A stretch of 63,984 nucleotides of DNA, counting the filler, from Octopus bimaculoides (lineage: Eukaryota), in NCBI RefSeq assembly GCF_001194135.2. It is 6 parts of 6 records of this genome, joined end to end, with 100 filler letters (N's around TTAATTAATTAA, not from the genome) between each part and the next. Parts side by side here need not be neighbours in the genome. Positions count along the whole stretch, not along the records: positions 54,717 to 59,264 come from NC_068991.1; 5 more parts are not named here. One strand, given 5' to 3'. Of the stretch, positions 9,858-59,118 are shown piece by piece (within the stretch, counting starts at the first letter, position 1; every line of letters starts with the position of its first letter). Under the pieces are notes generated by a model. The model did not search any database. It saw only the letters and a list, made by a program, of their open reading frames with translations, and had not been told where the DNA came from. The position numbers and the translations under genes are program-made.

Positions 9858-12044
9858 ATCTGTCTGTTTGTCTGTTTGTCACGATTACTTTTTTATTCAA
9901 ATTTTTAAAATTCATATTTCATTAAATTCTTATTTTCCAATTTATAAAATGCATCATTTTTAATAGCGTATTTAAATTTAAAGTAAACTTTAGACTTTTA
10001 GGGGCATTATTTAAGTCACAAAGACACATAGATAAATGTATAAATACATACACATACGCACACAACACACACACACATATACTCGCGCGCGTGCGCATAA
10101 TCACACACCTACCACTAAATCTTCCGTCCGAAACACAACCAAATCGCCATATTGTTTCCCCATTTTCCTTCTCTTTTGCTCTTCTCAGAAGTTCTTCCAT
10201 TCAACTGACCAAACGAGCTACGAACCTCGTATTCTTAACGTCCATCTGACGCACCCTATATTTCTCCTGAACTCCTTTGTGTCCTCCACACCTGATGGGG
10301 TGGATGTTGTGATATAAAGCGCGTAGCTAAGTGATTAGGGTGTTCGGCTAGCTATTGTAAAGTCGTGAGTTCAATTCCCAGCGGCGATTCGTGTTCTTGG
10401 GTAAGACCTTTTATTTCAAGTTGCACCAGTCTACTAAGCCGGCAAAATGAGTTGTAACTGTCATACAATGGGCCAGCCTTGTCACATTTTGTGTCACGCT
10501 GAAACTCCTTGAGAACCATGTTAAAGCTACGCGTGTCTGTGGATTCATATTTAACGTATGTAGAAATATTTATAGCATGGAATAATGCATGTAATGATGT
10601 CGTTGCGAAGGAATTGGTGCAATTAGCATCTCATTAACGTAATCTGGTAATCAACGTGATATAAACGATAAATCAACTTATCGTTTATATCACTGCCGTT
10701 TCCTCTACTTGAACCATAAACCCTGAAACAAAATGACCTAGATTACTGAAGTACCTCATCTCCTACTAGCCTTCTAGACTTCAGATATATTTATAAAGCG
10801 AATAAGAAAAGAAATACACACCTACATACATACATACATACACATACACACAATATATATATATATATATATGTGTGCATGTATGAATATATATGTATGT
10901 ATATATATATGTATATTTCGTTTTTGGATTTGGTTTGCAAGATTTCTTATGTGATTTCGTGTGTTGAAGCATATTCTGTTGTGGCTGGGGAGAGTAATTT
11001 TTTTTTTTGTGCCTAAGAAATATGTGGAAATTTTAACGGTGAGTGTGTTAAATTTTAAGGCACAATAAGAAAATGACTCCCCAGACACAGTAGAATATAT
11101 GTGTGTTTGTATGCATATAAACTAACTTGGGATAGTGACAGACCCACCCACCTTGTCTTGTATTACTGATGGCTCTTACATATACATATGTATGAATGTA
11201 TCTTGATATATATATATNNNNNNNNNNNNNNNNNNNNNNNNNNNNNNNNNNNNNNNNNNNNNNNNNNNNNNNNNNNNNNNNNNNNNNNNNNNNNNNNNNN
11301 NNNNNNNNNNNNNNNNNNNNNNNNNNNNNNNNNNNNNNNNNNNNNNNNNNNNNNNNNNNNNNNNNNNNNNNNNNNNNNNNNNNNNNNNNNNNNNNNNNNN
11401 NNNNNNNNNNNNNNNNNNNNNNNNNNNNNNNNNNNNNNNNNNNNNNNNNNNNNNNNNNNNNNNNNATATATATATATATATATATATACATGCATGTTTC
11501 TTCAGTTATTACTTTACCTTCCAGCATTTATAAGGCAATTTGATTCGATTCCTTTAAGATCTAAACCAGCTTCATTGTTATACAACTACTTCTAACCGTT
11601 TAACAAATCTCCTTCACATTCACATTGCAGATTTAACTTTGTGGACCTGTAAATTTTAAAAGTGCTCCGGAACTCCTTTATCTTTTTCTACATGTCCTCT
11701 GTGCTTTCAGCGAACATTAATTCTTCTTATCTTCTCTCTTGCAAGGTTACAATTATTCCTTTTTTCCATTGATCGAATCACTAAGGAACTAGCAAATCTC
11801 ACTCCCTACAAAATTAAAACAAACAAAAAGACACTTGATCCCGGAAGCCCGGTTAAATAACTTCCGAGCAGGGGCGTTGTCAAGAAGCCACAACGAGATC
11901 AACTTTGCCTTTCATCTTTATTCGATCGTTAAAATAAAGTATCAGTTTACTGGGTGCGATAATATCGATTAAAACCCTCCCCTCAAAATTGCTCGCCTTG
12001 TGTCTAAATTTCAAGCAATTATTGGAGAGGAATCTCTAAACAAA

Positions 12045-12174
<130 letters not shown>

Positions 12175-12607
12175 CTATATAATTATATCATGAGAGATAA
12201 GGCGAAAACGACCTGTCTCCAGTATGCTTGAAGTGCTGATACCCTCAAAAAACTACTAAAAGCTCCAGCTAAATATGCACATGACCGAAAACGGGTTAGG
12301 GACAGAAAATTAAAAAGACCCCACATGAATTGTGAATTGGTTCCAATTTCTGAATAATATAACAGAAAAGCCGCCAACAACTGATGAAGGGTCGTTTTTT
12401 CGTGTTACTTGTGTTGTTTTCCGTTTGTTTCTTTCATTGTTCGCAGCAAAAGTTCGTATTCCGTGTTGTCTTATTTCGTATTTCATGTTGTTTTCCTATT
12501 TTATGTTTATCTTATGTTGTTTACGTCCCGTGGCGTCCTGTGCCCATATATGTATGTACATATATATGTGTATGTATGCATGTATATTTATATATTATAT
12601 ATTATGC

Positions 12608-12641
<34 letters not shown>

Positions 12642-13283
12642 NNNNNNNNNNNNNNNNNNNNNNNNNNNNNNNNNNNNNNNNNNNNNNNNNNNNNNNNNNN
12701 NNNNNNNNNNNNNNNNNNNNNNNNNNNNNNNNNNNNNNNNNNNNNNNNNNNNNNNNNNNNNNNNNNNNNNNNNNNNNNNNNNNNNNNNNNNNNNNNNNNN
12801 NNNNNNNNNNNNNNNNNNNNNNNNNNNNNNNNNNNNNNNNNNNNNNNNNNNNNNNNNNNNNNNNNNNNNNNNNNNNNNNNNNNNNNNNNNNNNNNNNNNN
12901 NNNNNNNNNNNNNNNNNNNNNNNNNNNNNNNNNNNNNNNNNNNNNNNNNNNNNNNNNNNNNNNNNNNNNNNNNNNNNNNNNNNNNNNNNNNNNNNNNNNN
13001 NNNNNNNNNNNNNNNNNNNNNNNNNNNNNNNNNNNNNNNNNNNNNNNNNNNNNNNNNNNNNNNNNNNNNNNNNNNNNNNNNNNNNNNNNNNNNNNNNNNN
13101 NNNNNNNNNNNNNNNNNNNNNNNNNNNNNNNNNNNNNNNNNNNNNNNNNNNNNNNNNNNNNNNNNNNNNNNNNNNNNNNNNNNNNNNNNNNNNNNNNNNN
13201 NNNNNNNNNNNNNNNNNNNNNNNNNNNNNNNNNNNNNNNNNNNNNNNNNNNNNNNNNNNNNNNACACACACACACATGTATGA

Positions 13284-13337
<54 letters not shown>

Positions 13338-13635
13338 CATATATGGAAGCGCGTTAGATCAGAAACGAAGTGATTGAAGAACCAGTCAGAAAAAATATCT
13401 CTGGAGTAAACCACGCATTCTTTGAGCTGGGGTATAGAAGGGGTAATTGATACATAATATCTCTAAGGATATATTTTTTTATATTTCCCTATCACTATGG
13501 ACTTCCGGTAATGAAAGCTATCAACATTTTCGTAAAAGGATAAAAAGCAACAATTCGCTCCTTATTTGACTTGCCACCAAGGGGACTGTGTTCATGTTTG
13601 TGGGGCTTCATGTTTACAGGAACAGAACGGTGTTA

Positions 13636-13942
13636 AAACTGGCACTCCGTCGGTTGCGACAACGAGGGTCCCAGTTGATCCGATCAACCGAACAACCTGC
13701 TCGTGAAATCAACGTGCAAGCGACTGAGCACTCTACAGACACGAAGCTGGCCCTTAACGTGATCAGAATGTGGCAAGGCCGGCCCCTTTTGAATCACAGA
13801 TACCACACATTTTTGCCAGCTGAGTGAACTGGAGCAGCCTGAAATAAAATGTCTTGCTCAAGAACAAAACGCATCGCCCGGTCCTGCAATCGAAACCACG
13901 ATCTTGTGATTGTGAGGGCAACACGCTTAAACACTAGGCGAC
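13636..13942 (-). mobile_element. tRNA-derived SINE family C (CORE-like centre)
   Basis: tRNA head, then TTCTTGAGCAAGACATTTTATTTCA..CCAGTTCACTCAGCTG, then tail GGCC(A/G)GCCTTG(T/C)CACATT. Other copies at ~10318-10545(+), 46940-47088(-) and 47402-47705(-). Confidence 0.85.
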
Positions 13943-14770
13943 GTATATACAATTTCGTTTATATTATTATTTTGCGCAATTCACGTGTTTTCTACAACCT
14001 GCTGTATAGCGATATCTTGAACAAATCCGTTGCAATTTCGTCTCTGATTTGCCTATATCAGCAACAATTTCTGTTTTAAGTCGTAAATTTCACCAACACG
14101 TGTTACTGAGAAGTCTTGTTCTAATTTATTAATTACTCCTAATTTCTGTGTCACATTTAAAAGTTCACACGCTTTTTATTTACGTCCTCTGTCACTCTAC
14201 TCCACGTTGGAACTGCAAGGATTGCCAATTCTTAGAAAAAGAAATAGCTAGAAATAAATGAAACAAAATAATAATTTACATGTCACAGAAATACTTTGTA
14301 CACAACCTGAGAATGTTATATTCCTTGGTGAACTGCGACCAAAAGTGAGTTATTTTATATAAGAAAAAAGCAATAGGACATGCGCACGGGTCCGTCTGTA
14401 TAGACACATGCACAAATATTCATACATACACACATTCAGCTACACATTCAGTTATACATATACACATACGCACACAAACGTACAGGTATATACAAACATA
14501 AGTATTCATACAAGCAGGCATACACATGCATACACTCACTGACATTCATACGTATACTTACTTATATGTATGTGTGTGTATGCGTGTGTGTGAATGTGTA
14601 TGTGTACACACGCACAAACACACACCCACACACACCCACACATTTATACATATAGATATATAAAAGAACAAGTGGGGTTTAAAATTTACAACAGCTGTTT
14701 CGGTAGAATCAGCCCCATTTTTGTTTCATTTATACCCACGCCGCACGAAGGGCCAACCCTGAGTCAGATT

Positions 14771-55016: not shown

Positions 55017-55117
<101 letters not shown>

Positions 55118-55262: not shown

Positions 55263-56800
55263 TTAGTTCTTTATATTAAGGGAAAAGGGAGGGGCGAACC
55301 AAATAATTTTCCTTGGTTTATTTTTACGTTTCTTATCATTCTGATTAATACTAGAGTAGTTATGTATTACATTATCTTTGATGACATTTGATCGATTATT
55401 GATATTTTGATTATTATTAGAGGCATTATATATTAATTTATCTTTGAAGCCACTATTGACTAGGGTCTTGTTATAATAGGGGGAGGGGGTAGATTTCTCG
55501 AAAATTTCTTTAGAAGAAGAGAGGTTAGACATTCTGTTACTAATATTAGCTATCAGATTTTTAAATATTACAGGAGTGTGACAAGACTGTTTATGTATAT
55601 ATGCGAGTTTCTCATTAGGCTTATGGAAAGGTTTATACTATGAGGAATTTAGATCTAGGGGAACATCTAAATAATCAACTGTAGAGAGATTGAAGAGATT
55701 AGTAGCTACTGTAATTTTAAGTCCTAATTGATTAAAGGTAGAAATAAGTTGCTTTCTAAATCTATCAAGGATGTGACCATCACACCTATGGGAAATAACC
55801 AAACCGTCGTCACGGTATAGGCCAACGTCATGAGATGAGCATTTATATCTCAATGTGTTTACTATAATAAACCCACAAGATCACAGACGTCAGCACTATC
55901 ATATGACCCCTATAGATACATCAAATAGTTCGTCACTACGCAACTTTTTTACTCACGCTAATCCTTTACTGAACAATAGTGTTTTCCTCGCATGCCAGAT
56001 AAAATATTGTCAACATCAACAAATGATTTAGCAAATTCAATTGCTTTATCAAGCAGCGATCTAGCTATAGAGGGATAAAAGTCTATGATATCAATCTGGG
56101 TAAATTTAGCCTTATTCTTATTCTTGATATTCTTAAACCAATCTATTACAGTAAAATTGTTATTTCATTGTTGAATCCCAGTAATTTCCCTAATTCTATT
56201 ATTAATGTCTTTAAGTAATTTCTTTTAGTTACTAGCCCATTTTCTGATCTCACCGGATTTAACAATCTAGATGTAAGATTATCACAAAAATTAGACTTAA
56301 GGTCTTTTAAAGTAATTAACGCCTCGCTCTTAGTAAAGCGTTCTAATCTATTATCGATATTACTACGTTTAGCGAGGAGTTTAGCTTCATCATTGATATC
56401 ATAGTATCTCTCTACGTTAGCTTTCTTACATTTAGAGGAAAAGGTGTCTTTTCGCAACTTATTGTATAAACCATTAGTAACTTCATAACAGAGAAAAACA
56501 TAAATATATTTTGAAGAATACTACCTATTCCTAACTGACTTGATATCTTCCCAACCTTATCATTTAAGGTCTTAGGACAATAGTTCCTTTACTTTTTTAC
56601 TTTTCATTTTTTACAGTTTAGTCTTTGTGTTTTCATTTCCACTTTTCGTTTTTCGCTTTCTGTTGTTTACTTTCTGCGTTTTATATATGCTGCCTTCTTG
56701 GTTATTTCGCGTTTCTTCTATTATTGAATATTTTTTTAGTTCGCTATGATATATGGTTTGCGCCTGAAGAATGCTTTTGATTTTTCTCAACATATGAAAC
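55263..56800 (-). mobile_element. Penelope-like element RT relic
   Basis: ALITLKDLKSNF..RLLNPVRSENG; IDIIDFYPSI; FDVSIG-SYDSADVCDLVG; GLYRDDGL; LKITV; RKIIWFAPPFS. Many stops and frameshifts. Confidence 0.85.
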
Positions 56801-56861: not shown

Positions 56862-56936
<75 letters not shown>

Positions 56937-57274
56937 TATAGACAGAGAAAGAGAGAGAGAGAGGGGGATAGATAAAGATGGCCGGTTTTGGGGATTACTC
57001 TGATTTTCACGACCATAAAGAGCTTAGCTTTACAGTGTTTCTTCAGACCCTAAACTCGTTGGCCTATGGCGTCACTAGCAAGTGGCCTGTCTGGAAAATG
57101 GACGAGGAAAAGACTTCGTTACTATAAGTCAACAATAATGGATTGTTTCCCTTTGATTGCTATCTATAGGGCTTTCCTATAAGTAGGTTATCTCCCTTGG
57201 CTAGGCAGCGCTCCATGTAGATAATTAAACTTCCGGAGGCTACCCACGCCATTGTTATTGTTTTACGTCTTATC

Positions 57275-57487
57275 ATGGATATAAAGCAGCTTGGTGATTC
57301 AGCTATCGAAGTACTTACTGTGCCTGAGTTAAAGAAATATTTAAGATTATATGGACAGTATGTTACTGGAAGAAAGGCGGACTTGACTGAAAGGTTGAAA
57401 GGAATAAAAATTCTGTCGATGAAGAATGTCAACAAAGTAAATTCATCAGATGATAAGTCTGAAGTATCGGACGATACTTCAGACAGG
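57275..57487 (+). pseudogene. SAP-domain ORF fragment inside the TIR element (runs into a gap)
   Basis: MDIKQLGDSAIEVLTVPELKKYLRLYGQYVTGRKADLTERLKG matches the SAP pattern LxVxELKxxLRxxGxxxxGxKADLxERL. Confidence 0.75.
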
Positions 57488-57780
57488 NNNNNNNNNNNNN
57501 NNNNNNNNNNNNNNNNNNNNNNNNNNNNNNNNNNNNNNNNNNNNNNNNNNNNNNNNNNNNNNNNNNNNNNNNNNNNNNNNNNNNNNNNNNNNNNNNNNNN
57601 NNNNNNNNNNNNNNNNNNNNNNNNNNNNNNNNNNNNNNNNNNNNNNNNNNNNNNNNNNNNNNNNNNNNNNNNNNNNNNNNNNNNNNNNNNNNNNNNNNNN
57701 NNNNNNNNNNNNNNNNNNNNNNNNNNNNNNNNNNNNNNNNNNNNNNNNNNNNNNNNNNNNNNNNNNNNNNNNNNNNNNNN

Positions 57781-58050
57781 GTGCTACGGATGAAATCAAA
57801 GCAACAGTTAAGGAGTGGCATATTTTACCACGACAGACACGTACACAGCATGGAATACCACGATGTGAGTGAAAGCTGCTCTCACTGTATTGTCCTGTGT
57901 CTGGTAATCCCTTCGATACCGACATCAAACCAAAAAAAGAATCCTGACCACAGAGTGTGGGTAATTATGTCAAATGTCACTGGCAATGTGCATTCAGCTG
58001 ATTGCAACTGTTAAAGCAAATCACTGAGCATGCGTACATGTCATACGGGA
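57781..58050 (+). pseudogene. Disrupted SWIM zinc-finger fragment inside the TIR element
   Basis: LVIPSIPTSNQKKNPDHRVWVIMSNVTGNVHSADCNC*, then frameshifted ACVHV, giving a CxC..CxH arrangement. Confidence 0.65.
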
Positions 58051-58524
58051 GAGTTCCAATCAGGGGTGGATAACACCTTATAGGAAAGCCCTATAATTAA
58101 CGCTGTTGGCTGATGGATCCTAGTAGCAACAGCAGCTCTCCCAATTACTACTACAGTACCAATAGCAACAGCAGCAGACAGGAATAGCAGCAGCACCATC
58201 GCCAGTGATAACAATAACAATATCGACAGCAACGGTAGCAACCTCGAACAGAAATAGCAACAGTGCCATCGTTAACAATAATAATAACAACAGTTAGAAC
58301 ATCAGCCACTTCGACAGCGCAGATAACAGCTCCAGAAACTCCAACGAAGATGGTCATAATACCACCAATAGCACCAACAACAGCGTCACTACCGAGGATA
58401 TCCCCTACACCAGCGTTAATGGAACCGGCGCCAGCACCGACACGAACGCCAGTTTTAACGATATAAACACCAACAATACCAGCGCCATCAACAGCCGTGG
58501 CATCTACGTAAACATCAACAGGAA

Positions 58525-58748
58525 TAATATCGCCAACACCCGCACACGAAGATATACCAAATGTTCCGGAAACACATTCAAACAGCGCCTCTTCAGGATT
58601 CCAGACAGTAGATATGTTACGTCCTTAGCCAGCCATGTATGACGGCTGAAAGACAAAAGAACTCCACACATAATATCATGGAAGATCCTAGAAAATCCAG
58701 GCCCGTACAAAAATGAGATCAAGCGTTATAAACTGTGCATAGCCGAGC
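58525..58748 (+). mobile_element. Penelope-like GIY-YIG endonuclease remnant
   Basis: YTKCSGNTFKQRL..TSLASHV*RLKDK..IISWKILENPGPYKNEIKRYKLCIAE resembles the PLE endonuclease C-terminus. Confidence 0.7.
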
Positions 58749-59118
58749 GGATGAGGGGAATATCCCTAACTCCAGGAGGGAGGTCTTCAGACTCTGCTCG
58801 CACTTCAGGAAATTTATGCTGGAGTCCTGGGATCTACCAACAGTCAAGGTTAATTACAGATAGCAGTCAAAGGGAGATAATACCTTGTTGTTGACGCATA
58901 GCAACGAAGTCTTTTCCTCCTCCATTTTCTAGAAAGGCCATTTGCTAGAGAAGCCATAGGCCAACAGGTTTAGGGTCTGAACAAACGCTGTAAAGTTAAG
59001 TGCTTTATGGACGTGAAACCCAAGGTAACCTCATAAACCGGCCACGTCTATCTTTATATACTCTACTGCTCTATAACTTAGAGTGTGCTTCTTTTACGGA
59101 TTTATGATTTACTGACGA
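58749..59118 (+). mobile_element. PLE terminal-repeat (pLTR)-like segment; paralogues at 31153-31560 and 56990-57167 plus 58093-58130 (opposite orientation)
   Basis: Three copies share GGGTTTCACGTCCATAAA, AAACCTGTTG, GGAAAAGACTTC and CACACTCTAAGTTATAGAGCAG. This copy directly follows the GIY-YIG remnant. Confidence 0.65.

What the first reader, a model, noticed from the sequence alone, without database searches (positions are those of the whole stretch)
57168..58092. SAP+SWIM TIR transposon with an AT target duplication supported by an in-window empty site
Seen: perfect 16-bp TIRs bracket a SAP ORF starting ~107 bp inside the left end and a broken SWIM finger ending just before the right TIR. 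The host repeat has a paralogue at 58849-58864 (reverse complement GCTATCT-GT-AATTAAC). Removing the element with AGGG termini and an AT TSD restores GCTATCT-AT-AATTAAC at the same length, whereas a TA TSD would leave 2 extra bases. Established: ISL2EU-type PIF/Harbinger relatives make AT TSDs and carry an accessory YqaJ-exonuclease ORF; SAP and SWIM also occur in Zisupton/KDZ elements. Inference: this is a deletion derivative of a cephalopod ISL2EU-like family whose accessory protein has an N-terminal SAP domain, an architecture I do not recognise as described.
Basis: partly seen in the sequence, partly recalled or inferred. Interest (0 to 1): 0.75.

Follow-up and report, generated by a model that had tools for sequence, protein, structure and literature searches.

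The report
Truncated ISL2EU transposon copy in octopus
This is a short, defective copy of an ISL2EU-type cut-and-paste DNA transposon in an octopus genome that keeps only the element's ends and the first part (SAP domain plus half a zinc finger) of its accessory nuclease gene; it is an ordinary repeat, though the SAP-SWIM front end of that accessory protein was not described in the papers I could search.

Summary
A perfect 16-nt TIR (19 nt with flanking bases) brackets 57168-58092, and no shuffle exceeded 14 nt. A SAP ORF starts 107 nt inside. The flanks lie in a repeat whose inverted paralogue gives a gap-free empty site.

The ORF is multi-copy in Octopus bimaculoides (12 short protein clusters, 77-97% identical). 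Its full-length relatives in bivalves and gastropods are SAP + SWIM + YqaJ proteins of 550-600 aa. In Sinanodonta, Mya and Haliotis these genes sit tail-to-tail with a THAP/HTH_Tnp_4/DDE_Tnp_4 transposase gene, between TIRs homologous to the octopus TIR. AT flanks both ends in 14 of 15 independent insertions. This is the published ISL2EU architecture.

Three corrections apply.
- The SWIM finger is truncated, not just broken. Only the CxC half survives; the downstream "CxH" lies in right-end non-coding DNA.
- The in-window empty site alone also fits TATA, 3-bp or TSD-less models. Other copies exclude the 3- and 4-bp models. A blunt A|T insertion cannot be excluded.
- The 293-N gap hides about 28-39 codons. 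Both sides are collinear with relatives, but the frame across the gap is unknowable.

The window copy has no transposase or nuclease, and no autonomous cephalopod copy was found. Verdict: new member of a known kind, modest interest.

The parts
57166..57167 (.). Left copy of the AT target-site duplication
   Evidence: AT flanks both ends here and in 13 of 14 independent insertions in three other molluscs. The empty-site paralogue has GT at this spot.
57168..57183 (+). Left terminal inverted repeat, AGGGCTTTCCTATAAG
   Evidence: Perfect inverted repeat. Its GGGCTTTCCTATAAG core matches the Sinanodonta TIR GGGCATTCCAATAAG at 13 of 15 positions.
57184..57274 (+). Left subterminal region and 5' leader of ORF1
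   Evidence: Aligns with the left end of the Sinanodonta element (AACTTCCGG.GGCTA block conserved).
57275..57487 (+). ORF1 remnant, part 1: codons 1-71; the SAP domain is residues 13-42 (57311-57400)
   Evidence: Pfam SAP E=6.2e-6, above the gathering score. It differs at 3 of 71 residues from O. bimaculoides P0004.
57488..57780 (.). Assembly gap (293 N) inside ORF1
   Evidence: Relatives carry 28-39 residues here (..NKQKLISPLGEV..PNFTDNDIYNYL..). True length and frame are unknown.
57781..58014 (+). ORF1 remnant, part 2: VLRMK...VHSADCNC plus the TAA stop; holds the strands and CxC half of the SWIM finger only
   Evidence: Corresponds to P0013 residues about 106-179. The DNA aligns to Sinanodonta exon 1, 10325-10537 (score 133, shuffle max 49). 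Most octopus copies share the same stop.
58015..58027 (+). Junction of the internal deletion (with the stop codon, 16 nt of uncertain origin)
   Evidence: Lies between the last residue homologous to exon 1 and the first base homologous to the right end. It weakly resembles the Sinanodonta exon 1 end and intron start.
58028..58076 (+). Right subterminal region (non-coding in full-length elements)
   Evidence: 58028-58092 aligns to Sinanodonta 14399-14464, upstream of the transposase THAP exon (score 57, shuffle mean 24.7, max 40).
58077..58092 (-). Right terminal inverted repeat, CTTATAGGAAAGCCCT
   Evidence: Exact reverse complement of the left TIR.
58093..58094 (.). Right copy of the AT target-site duplication
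56954..57165 (+). Host repeat, part left of the insertion
   Evidence: 86% identical to the inverted paralogue.
58095..58134 (+). Host repeat, part right of the insertion
   Evidence: Homology to the paralogue continues about 40 nt past the insertion point.
58817..59072 (-). Inverted paralogue of the host repeat; holds the empty site GCTATCT-GT-AATTAAC at 58849-58864

Best explanation
57168-58092 is a non-autonomous internal-deletion derivative of an ISL2EU-type DNA transposon (PHIS, or PIF/Harbinger-ISL2EU-Spy, superfamily).

The intact element type, seen in bivalves and gastropods, is 4.6-6.9 kb and carries two convergent genes between short TIRs. ORF1 is a SAP + SWIM + YqaJ (lambda-exonuclease-like) protein. 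ORF2 is a THAP + HTH + DDE_Tnp_4 transposase.

The octopus copy keeps both TIRs, about 90 nt of left and 50-65 nt of right subterminal sequence, and roughly the first exon of ORF1 (SAP, linker and the CxC half of SWIM). It lacks the rest of SWIM, the YqaJ nuclease and the whole transposase gene.

Inferred: it was mobilised in trans by a transposase from an autonomous copy that recognised the conserved ends. It inserted into an AT dinucleotide inside an older repeat and duplicated the AT through a 2-nt staggered cut.

Shown: the anatomy, the homology, the multi-copy status, the AT flanks and the empty site. Inferred: trans-mobilisation, the staggered cut and the roles of ORF1's domains. Those roles would be SAP and SWIM for DNA or protein binding, and YqaJ for 5'-3' resection during excision or gap repair.
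For: - TIRs are perfect and far beyond chance.
- The ORF is multi-copy in O. bimaculoides: 12 clusters, all short (77-175 aa).
- An exhaustive HMMER search finds 550-600 aa relatives in molluscs with SAP, the SWIM signature and YqaJ.
- The YqaJ part matches lambda exonuclease and LHK-Exo by sequence (3syy E=3e-23, 1avq E=3.5e-10) and by predicted fold (mean pLDDT 84.8; TM 0.76 to 3syy). D428, E444 and K446 are nearly invariant.
- The SWIM region is predicted as four strands followed by a helix.
- Genomic context: ORF1 lies next to a THAP/HTH_Tnp_4/DDE_Tnp_4 gene in Sinanodonta (4 loci), Haliotis rufescens (2 loci), Mya arenaria (9 of 10 loci) and, without SAP, the fish Merluccius.
- The TIR and subterminal DNA of octopus and Sinanodonta are homologous at both ends.
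- AT flanks both ends in 14 of 15 independent insertions.
- The empty site is restored without a gap.
- These features match the published ISL2EU description (PMC4482050, PMC4122938, PMC9179366).
Against: - No transposase or YqaJ sequence exists in the window, and no autonomous cephalopod copy was found. No cephalopod is named among the top 120 hits for ORF1 or for the transposase.
- Octopus genomic DNA other than this piece could not be searched. The TSD in octopus therefore rests on one insertion.
- The DDE domain was not placed in a phylogeny with reference ISL2EU, Spy and Harbinger sequences.
- Two described ISL2EU traits are not seen. TIRs do not start with GG (they start AGGG, TCGA, TGTCC). 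The flanking bases are W..W rather than A..T.
- The gap could hide extra sequence.
Confidence: 0.9

Rival explanations
1. The same element, but with a Spy-like integration mechanism. It would insert bluntly between A and T (element ends T...A, here TAGGG...CCCTA) and duplicate no host base.
For: The filled and empty sites are identical under both models whenever the dinucleotide is AT. The window's empty site, all 14 AT-flanked copies and the Mya tandem GGACA-AT-TGTCC fit equally. Spy, the sister group of ISL2EU, does insert without a TSD (PMC4122938).
Against: The literature treats AT as a 2-bp TSD for ISL2EU (PMC4482050, PMC4122938). The base next to AT varies between families (A, T, T) while AT is invariant. 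That pattern is more natural for host sequence than for an element terminus.
Confidence: 0.08
2. The truncated SAP-half-SWIM ORF is not just debris. It would be expressed from many copies as a small DNA-binding protein that modulates transposition (like a P-element KP-type repressor), or it has been exonised into host genes.
For: Many octopus copies keep an open frame from M1 to the shared stop after CNC. One gene model (P0016) splices the element exon onto a host-like Kazal/OATP sequence.
Against: The copies are 77-97% identical, so open frames can persist by youth alone. The gene models are predictions with variable internal deletions. The SWIM lacks two of its four zinc ligands. No expression data were available.
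Confidence: 0.05
3. A SWIM-bearing element of another superfamily (Zisupton/KDZ or MULE), or a host SAP-domain gene that happens to lie between inverted repeats.
For: SAP and SWIM domains occur in other transposases and in host proteins. This is background knowledge, not tested here.
Against: Full-length relatives with homologous TIRs encode THAP/HTH/DDE_Tnp_4 plus YqaJ. The duplication is 2 bp, not 8-9 bp. The ORF is multi-copy.
Confidence: 0.01

Closest known systems
ISL2EU transposons (PHIS superfamily; Repbase families, Han et al. 2015, PMC4482050)
   Same: Short TIRs and AT flanks. Full-length relatives carry two ORFs: a THAP + HTH + DDE_Tnp_4 transposase and a YqaJ-exonuclease protein. 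They are 4.6-6.9 kb, against a published mean of about 4.8 kb. They occur only in animals.
   Different: The window copy is an internal-deletion derivative with neither enzyme. Its TIR begins AGGG, not GG. The flanking bases give T|AT|A here and W|AT|W in Mya, not A|AT|T. The YqaJ protein's N-terminal SAP domain and central SWIM finger are not mentioned in the papers I could search.
Spy transposons (Han et al. 2014, PMC4122938)
   Same: Related DDE transposase superfamily, an AT-rich target and short TIRs. A TSD-less reading of the junction cannot be excluded by sequence.
   Different: Spy has a single ORF, no THAP and no YqaJ partner, and inserts in AAA|TTT. Here the relatives have two ORFs with THAP and YqaJ, and the target is not AAATTT.
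PIF/Harbinger
   Same: DDE_Tnp_4 transposase, a two-ORF organisation and non-autonomous deletion derivatives or MITEs.
   Different: Harbinger's second ORF is a Myb/SANT protein and its TSD is 3-bp TWA. Here the second ORF is SAP-SWIM-YqaJ, and a 3-bp TSD fails in Mya.
Lambda exonuclease / YqaJ / LHK-Exo (PD-(D/E)XK 5'-3' exonucleases)
   Same: The C-terminal domain of the full-length ORF1 relatives matches by sequence and by predicted fold, with the D...ExK motif conserved.
   Different: That domain is deleted from the window copy. The eukaryotic proteins add SAP and SWIM in molluscs, or SWIM and a C-terminal PHD finger in fish, tick and sponge.

Membership tests
ISL2EU (PHIS superfamily) | DDE_Tnp_4-type transposase with HTH and an N-terminal THAP domain | tested here: met
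   Met in full-length relatives with homologous TIRs. Sinanodonta L001 has DDE_Tnp_4 (1e-43), HTH_Tnp_4 (2.3e-14) and THAP (3.3e-8). Mya and Haliotis show the same. It is absent from the window copy itself, which is non-autonomous.
ISL2EU (PHIS superfamily) | Second ORF encoding a YqaJ-exonuclease protein | tested here: met
   The window ORF is homologous to the N-terminal third of SAP-SWIM-YqaJ proteins: 52% identity to P0013 over residues 5-175 of the octopus relative P0004, which is about 94% identical to the window ORF. YqaJ scores 3e-18 in P0013. The YqaJ part is deleted in the window.
ISL2EU (PHIS superfamily) | 2-bp AT target-site duplication | tested here: met
   AT lies on both sides in octopus (1 of 1), Sinanodonta (3 of 3 independent), Haliotis (1 of 1) and Mya (9 of 10). 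The in-window empty site is restored gap-free. A 4-bp TATA TSD is excluded by L003, Haliotis and Mya, and a 3-bp TSD by Mya. Blunt A|T insertion is not excludable.
ISL2EU (PHIS superfamily) | TIRs usually begin with GG; target A|AT|T (described traits, PMC4482050) | tested here: not met
   TIRs begin AGGG (octopus, Sinanodonta), TCGA (Haliotis) and TGTCC (Mya). Flanking bases are T..A in octopus and mixed A/T in Mya. The paper says 'usually', so this is variation rather than exclusion.
ISL2EU (PHIS superfamily) | DDE domain falls in the ISL2EU clade, distinct from Spy, Harbinger and IS5 | not tested
   No reference ISL2EU, Spy or Harbinger transposase sequences (Repbase) were available in the tools.
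Spy | Single ORF; insertion in AAA|TTT without a TSD | tested here: not met
   Relatives have two ORFs with THAP and YqaJ. No target is AAATTT.
PIF/Harbinger | Myb/SANT second ORF; 3-bp TWA TSD | tested here: not met
   The second ORF is SAP-SWIM-YqaJ. 3-bp models fail in 5-6 of the Mya copies.
Zisupton / KDZ | Zisupton-type transposase; 8-bp TSD | tested here: not met
   The associated transposase is DDE_Tnp_4 and the duplication is 2 bp.
SAP domain (PF02037) | Match above the Pfam gathering score | tested here: met
   The window peptide scores 26.2 bits against 23.9, E=6.2e-6. 16 of 22 aligned sequences match. The family profile also hits the MKL1 and Tho1 SAP structures.
SWIM zinc finger (PF04434) | CxCxnCxH signature on a strand-strand-helix core | tested here: not met
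   The window has only CxC (..ADCNC*). The downstream C..H lies in right-end non-coding DNA. In full-length relatives CxCx7CxH is present in 18 of 19 sequences (one has S in place of the third Cys). The region is predicted as strands plus a helix. Pfam is sub-threshold there (17.5 against 19.6 bits; 3 of 22 at E<=0.01).

The most novel reading that the evidence does not exclude
Molluscs, including cephalopods, host a distinct ISL2EU sublineage whose accessory nuclease gained an N-terminal SAP domain. Non-mollusc relatives carry a C-terminal PHD finger instead. In octopus, first-exon-only derivatives of this lineage amplified and still encode an open SAP peptide of about 180 aa. That peptide may act as a trans-regulator of transposition or be exonised into host genes.
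Probability: 0.1. Interest if true: 0.5.

Novelty: new member of a known kind. Interest (0 to 1): 0.3.

Why it matters
Mainly annotation value. This octopus repeat family, and the dozens of 'SAP domain-containing' or 'uncharacterized' O. bimaculoides gene models derived from it, can be labelled as non-autonomous ISL2EU fragments rather than host genes.

A smaller point of biology also emerges. The little-studied ISL2EU accessory protein is modular, with a SWIM + YqaJ core. Molluscs add an N-terminal SAP; fish, tick and sponge add a C-terminal PHD finger. Mya arenaria holds at least 12 copies encoding an identical 581-aa ORF1 protein (10 loci examined), nine of the ten beside the transposase gene. 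That element would be a practical starting point for testing what the nuclease does in transposition, which the literature calls unknown.

Tried and rejected
- Exact-protein look-ups for three octopus models (P0004, P0002, P0009) found no genomic record. No further octopus copies or flanks could be tabulated.
- A metagenome scan for the octopus TIR plus subterminal motif found nothing.
- Rfam and tRNA scans of the piece gave only sub-threshold hits on microsatellites and no tRNA. The host repeat remains unidentified.
- Pfam on ORF fragments at 55263-56460 and 58151-58722 gave nothing.
- I first read 'ACVHV' or 'TCH' after the stop as the frameshifted second half of the SWIM finger. I rejected this when that stretch aligned to the non-coding right end of the Sinanodonta element.
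- The 4-bp TATA TSD model is rejected by L003 (AATA against TATA), Haliotis and Mya. The 3-bp models are rejected by Mya.
- L002/L004 and L005/L006 share flanks, so I counted each pair once as a segmental duplicate.
- One literature query was badly chosen and returned only irrelevant papers.

Full report
**The gap first.** The piece has one N run, 57488-57780, 293 N long. The sequence left of it ends exactly on codon 71 of an ORF that starts at ATG 57275 (...TSDR). The sequence right of it starts exactly on a codon (VLRMKSKQQ...).

Both halves are collinear, in the same order and orientation, with single proteins from elsewhere. These are O. bimaculoides P0004 (residues 1-71 and about 100-175, with 3 of 71 and 5 of 76 differences) and Sinanodonta woodiana P0013. 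The two sides therefore belong to one ORF of one element.

Relatives carry 28 aa (P0004), 32 aa (P0003) or 39 aa (P0013) in the missing stretch. That corresponds to 84-117 nt, against the 293 N written. With 293 N the halves are out of frame (57275 and 57781 differ modulo 3). Since the N count is only an estimate, the frame and the possibility of extra hidden sequence remain open.

**The observation.** AGGGCTTTCCTATAAG at 57168-57183 is exactly complementary to 58077-58092. The perfect inverted repeat is 19 nt when the flanking TAT/ATA is included. In 200 shuffles of 57000-58900 the longest exact inverted repeat was 14 nt.

The ORF's first 71 residues contain a SAP domain above Pfam's gathering score (E=6.2e-6). 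After the gap, frame 0 reads ...YHDVSESCSHCIVLCLVIPS...VWVIMSNVTGNVHSADCNC and stops at TAA 58012-58014.

The flanks lie in an older repeat. The stretch 56954-57167 plus 58095-58134 aligns to an inverted paralogue at 59072-58817 with 86% identity over 243 positions. The junction aligns without a gap: GCTATCT-AT-AATTAAC against GCTATCT-GT-AATTAAC.

**What the ORF is.** A word-indexed search with the post-gap peptide returned only Octopus bimaculoides proteins. There were 12 clusters (26 member sequences), 77-97% identical and all short (77-175 aa). Several are named 'SAP domain-containing protein' by UniProt. The ORF is therefore multi-copy and not a host gene.

An exhaustive HMMER search with the 175-aa octopus model P0004 found longer relatives of 550-600 aa. 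These come from Sinanodonta, Haliotis, Gigantopelta and Mercenaria. They carry an N-terminal SAP, a CxCx7CxH SWIM signature and a C-terminal YqaJ domain.

A second search with P0013 added many more bivalves and gastropods with the same layout: Pinctada, Pecten, Mya, Mytilus, Dreissena, Saccostrea, Solemya, Patella, Littorina, Lottia and Batillaria. It also found more distant SWIM-YqaJ proteins in a fish, ticks and a sponge. Those lack SAP and end in a PHD finger instead.

The YqaJ part matches lambda exonuclease and LHK-Exo by sequence (3syy E=3.1e-23, 1avq E=3.5e-10). It also matches by predicted fold (model mean pLDDT 84.8; TM 0.76 to 3syy). D428, E444 and K446 are nearly invariant. By established knowledge this is the PD-(D/E)XK motif of that family. 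The SWIM region is predicted as four strands followed by a helix, although Pfam's SWIM model stays just below threshold.

**What element it belongs to.** In Sinanodonta woodiana (L001) the SAP-SWIM-YqaJ gene (10001-12110, +) lies tail-to-tail with a second gene (12353-14346, -). My own scan of that gene's ORFs gives DDE_Tnp_4 E=1e-43, HTH_Tnp_4 E=2.3e-14 and THAP E=3.3e-8.

The pair is bounded by inverted repeats of AGGGCATTCCAATAAG at 9901 and 14464, giving an element of 4564 bp. The core matches the octopus TIR at 13 of 15 positions. Homology between octopus and mussel extends beyond the TIR at both ends: about 100 nt on the left and 65 nt on the right.

The same two-gene unit recurs in other genomes.
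- Three more Sinanodonta loci carry it; two of the four loci share flanks and count once as a segmental duplicate.
- Haliotis rufescens has a 6.9-kb element with TIR TCGACTTTCCGAAAAG.
- At least 12 contigs of Mya arenaria carry an identical 581-aa ORF1; ten loci were examined. The element there is 6.48 kb with TIR TGTCCTTTCCGATAAC, and nine of the ten loci also carry the transposase gene.
- A fish SWIM-YqaJ gene (Merluccius) also overlaps a THAP/HTH/DDE_Tnp_4 gene.

This is the published definition of ISL2EU: a transposase with DDE, HTH and THAP domains, a second ORF with a YqaJ exonuclease domain, AT TSDs and a length of about 4.8 kb (PMC4482050, PMC4122938, PMC9179366).

**Anatomy of the window copy.**
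- Left TIR, then 91 nt of leader.
- Roughly exon 1 of ORF1: SAP, linker, and the strands and CxC of SWIM.
- Sixteen nucleotides of uncertain origin, including the stop codon.
- The last 65 nt of the element, including the right TIR.

The tail 58028-58092 aligns to Sinanodonta 14399-14464 with score 57, against a shuffle mean of 24.7 and a maximum of 40. That region lies upstream of the transposase's THAP exon. The C..H that appears to complete the SWIM finger is therefore fortuitous. The finger is truncated, and the rest of ORF1 and the whole transposase gene are deleted.

In Sinanodonta an intron splits ORF1 between CxC and CxH. The octopus breakpoint lies within about 16 nt of that position. 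Most octopus copies share the stop after CNC, so the deletion predates the family's amplification.

**Target-site duplication.** The in-window empty site alone is restored to the right length by several models.
- An AT TSD (ends AGGG..CCCT).
- A TATA TSD (ends GGG..CCC).
- ATA or TAT TSDs with asymmetric ends.
- No TSD at all (ends TAGGG..CCCTA).

It excludes a TA TSD and also excludes AT being part of the element; each is off by 2 nt. The other copies narrow this down. Sinanodonta L003 has AATA on the left and TATA on the right. In Haliotis and Mya the base next to AT is T on the left and A on the right, which is TIR-complementary. Four-bp and 3-bp duplications therefore fail, whereas AT is present on both sides in 14 of 15 independent insertions. 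The exception is the right flank of Mya L011.

In Mya L008 two elements lie head to tail with a single AT between them. A blunt insertion between A and T, with T...A as the terminal bases, gives identical sequences in every case seen. It cannot be excluded without non-AT duplications or experiments.

The flanking bases are T..A in octopus and mixed A/T in Mya, not the A..T reported for ISL2EU. The TIRs do not begin with GG (PMC4482050). I treat both as lineage variation.

**What is not shown.**
- No transposase, nuclease or autonomous copy was found in a cephalopod. No cephalopod is named among the top 120 hits for full-length ORF1 or for the transposase.
- The transposases were not placed in a phylogeny with reference ISL2EU, Spy and Harbinger sequences.

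**Novelty.** ISL2EU and its YqaJ ORF are known, and Repbase lists ISL2EU families in an oyster (cited in PMC4122938). The library I could search holds no paper combining ISL2EU with octopus, or YqaJ with SAP domain and transposon. The three ISL2EU papers I read do not mention SAP or SWIM. UniProt's automatic names already flag the domains. I therefore rate this as a new member of a known kind, with a small descriptive addition: a SAP-SWIM-YqaJ accessory protein in the mollusc lineage, and a modular N- or C-terminal accessory domain across animals.

Noticed in passing
window 56954-57167 + 58095-58134 and 58817-59072 (inverted); spacer 58135-58816: The host repeat forms an inverted pair, 86% identical. 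The roughly 680-bp spacer is rich in GCT/GTT-type low-complexity sequence. It could be a foldback-like element or two copies of an unidentified repeat. No tRNA or real Rfam match was found.
   Followed up: partly
window 55263-56460, minus strand: There are broken ORF fragments with motifs such as YRDDGL and IIWFAPPFS. They may come from a decayed retroelement. No Pfam hit.
   Followed up: partly
window 55019-55116 and 56863-56965: Long microsatellites, (TG)n and (TG)n(GA)n(GACA)n. The second abuts the outer edge of the host repeat. They account for all the weak Rfam miRNA-like hits.
   Followed up: no
L008 10881-10914 (Mya arenaria CP111013.1): Two full-length ISL2EU copies lie head to tail, separated by a single AT (GGACA-AT-TGTCC). 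This is as expected if one inserted into the other's flanking AT. L015's right flank also begins AT-TGTCCG.
   Followed up: partly
L011 about 10896 (Mya arenaria CP111012.1): This is the only copy whose right flank is TG rather than AT. Its left flank is a short tandem repeat, and a Harbinger-type DDE gene starts about 460 nt downstream. A secondary rearrangement may explain it.
   Followed up: no
P0016 (O. bimaculoides gene model, 278 aa): This predicted protein joins the element's SAP/SWIM exon to a Kazal/OATP-like host sequence and an acidic tail. It is either exonisation of an element copy or a gene-model artefact.
   Followed up: no
L001 10545-10960 (Sinanodonta woodiana): ORF1 has an intron exactly between the CxC and CxH halves of the SWIM finger. 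The octopus deletion breakpoint lies within about 16 nt of the same position.
   Followed up: partly
P0224, P0225, P0234 and relatives (sponge, fish, tick): Non-mollusc SWIM-YqaJ relatives lack the SAP domain and carry a C-terminal PHD-type finger. The accessory protein's peripheral DNA- or chromatin-binding module appears to have been swapped between lineages.
   Followed up: partly
L007-L016 (Mya arenaria): At least 12 contigs encode an identical 581-aa ORF1 protein. Nine of the ten loci examined have the transposase gene alongside. This looks like a very recently active, possibly still active, ISL2EU family.
   Followed up: partly
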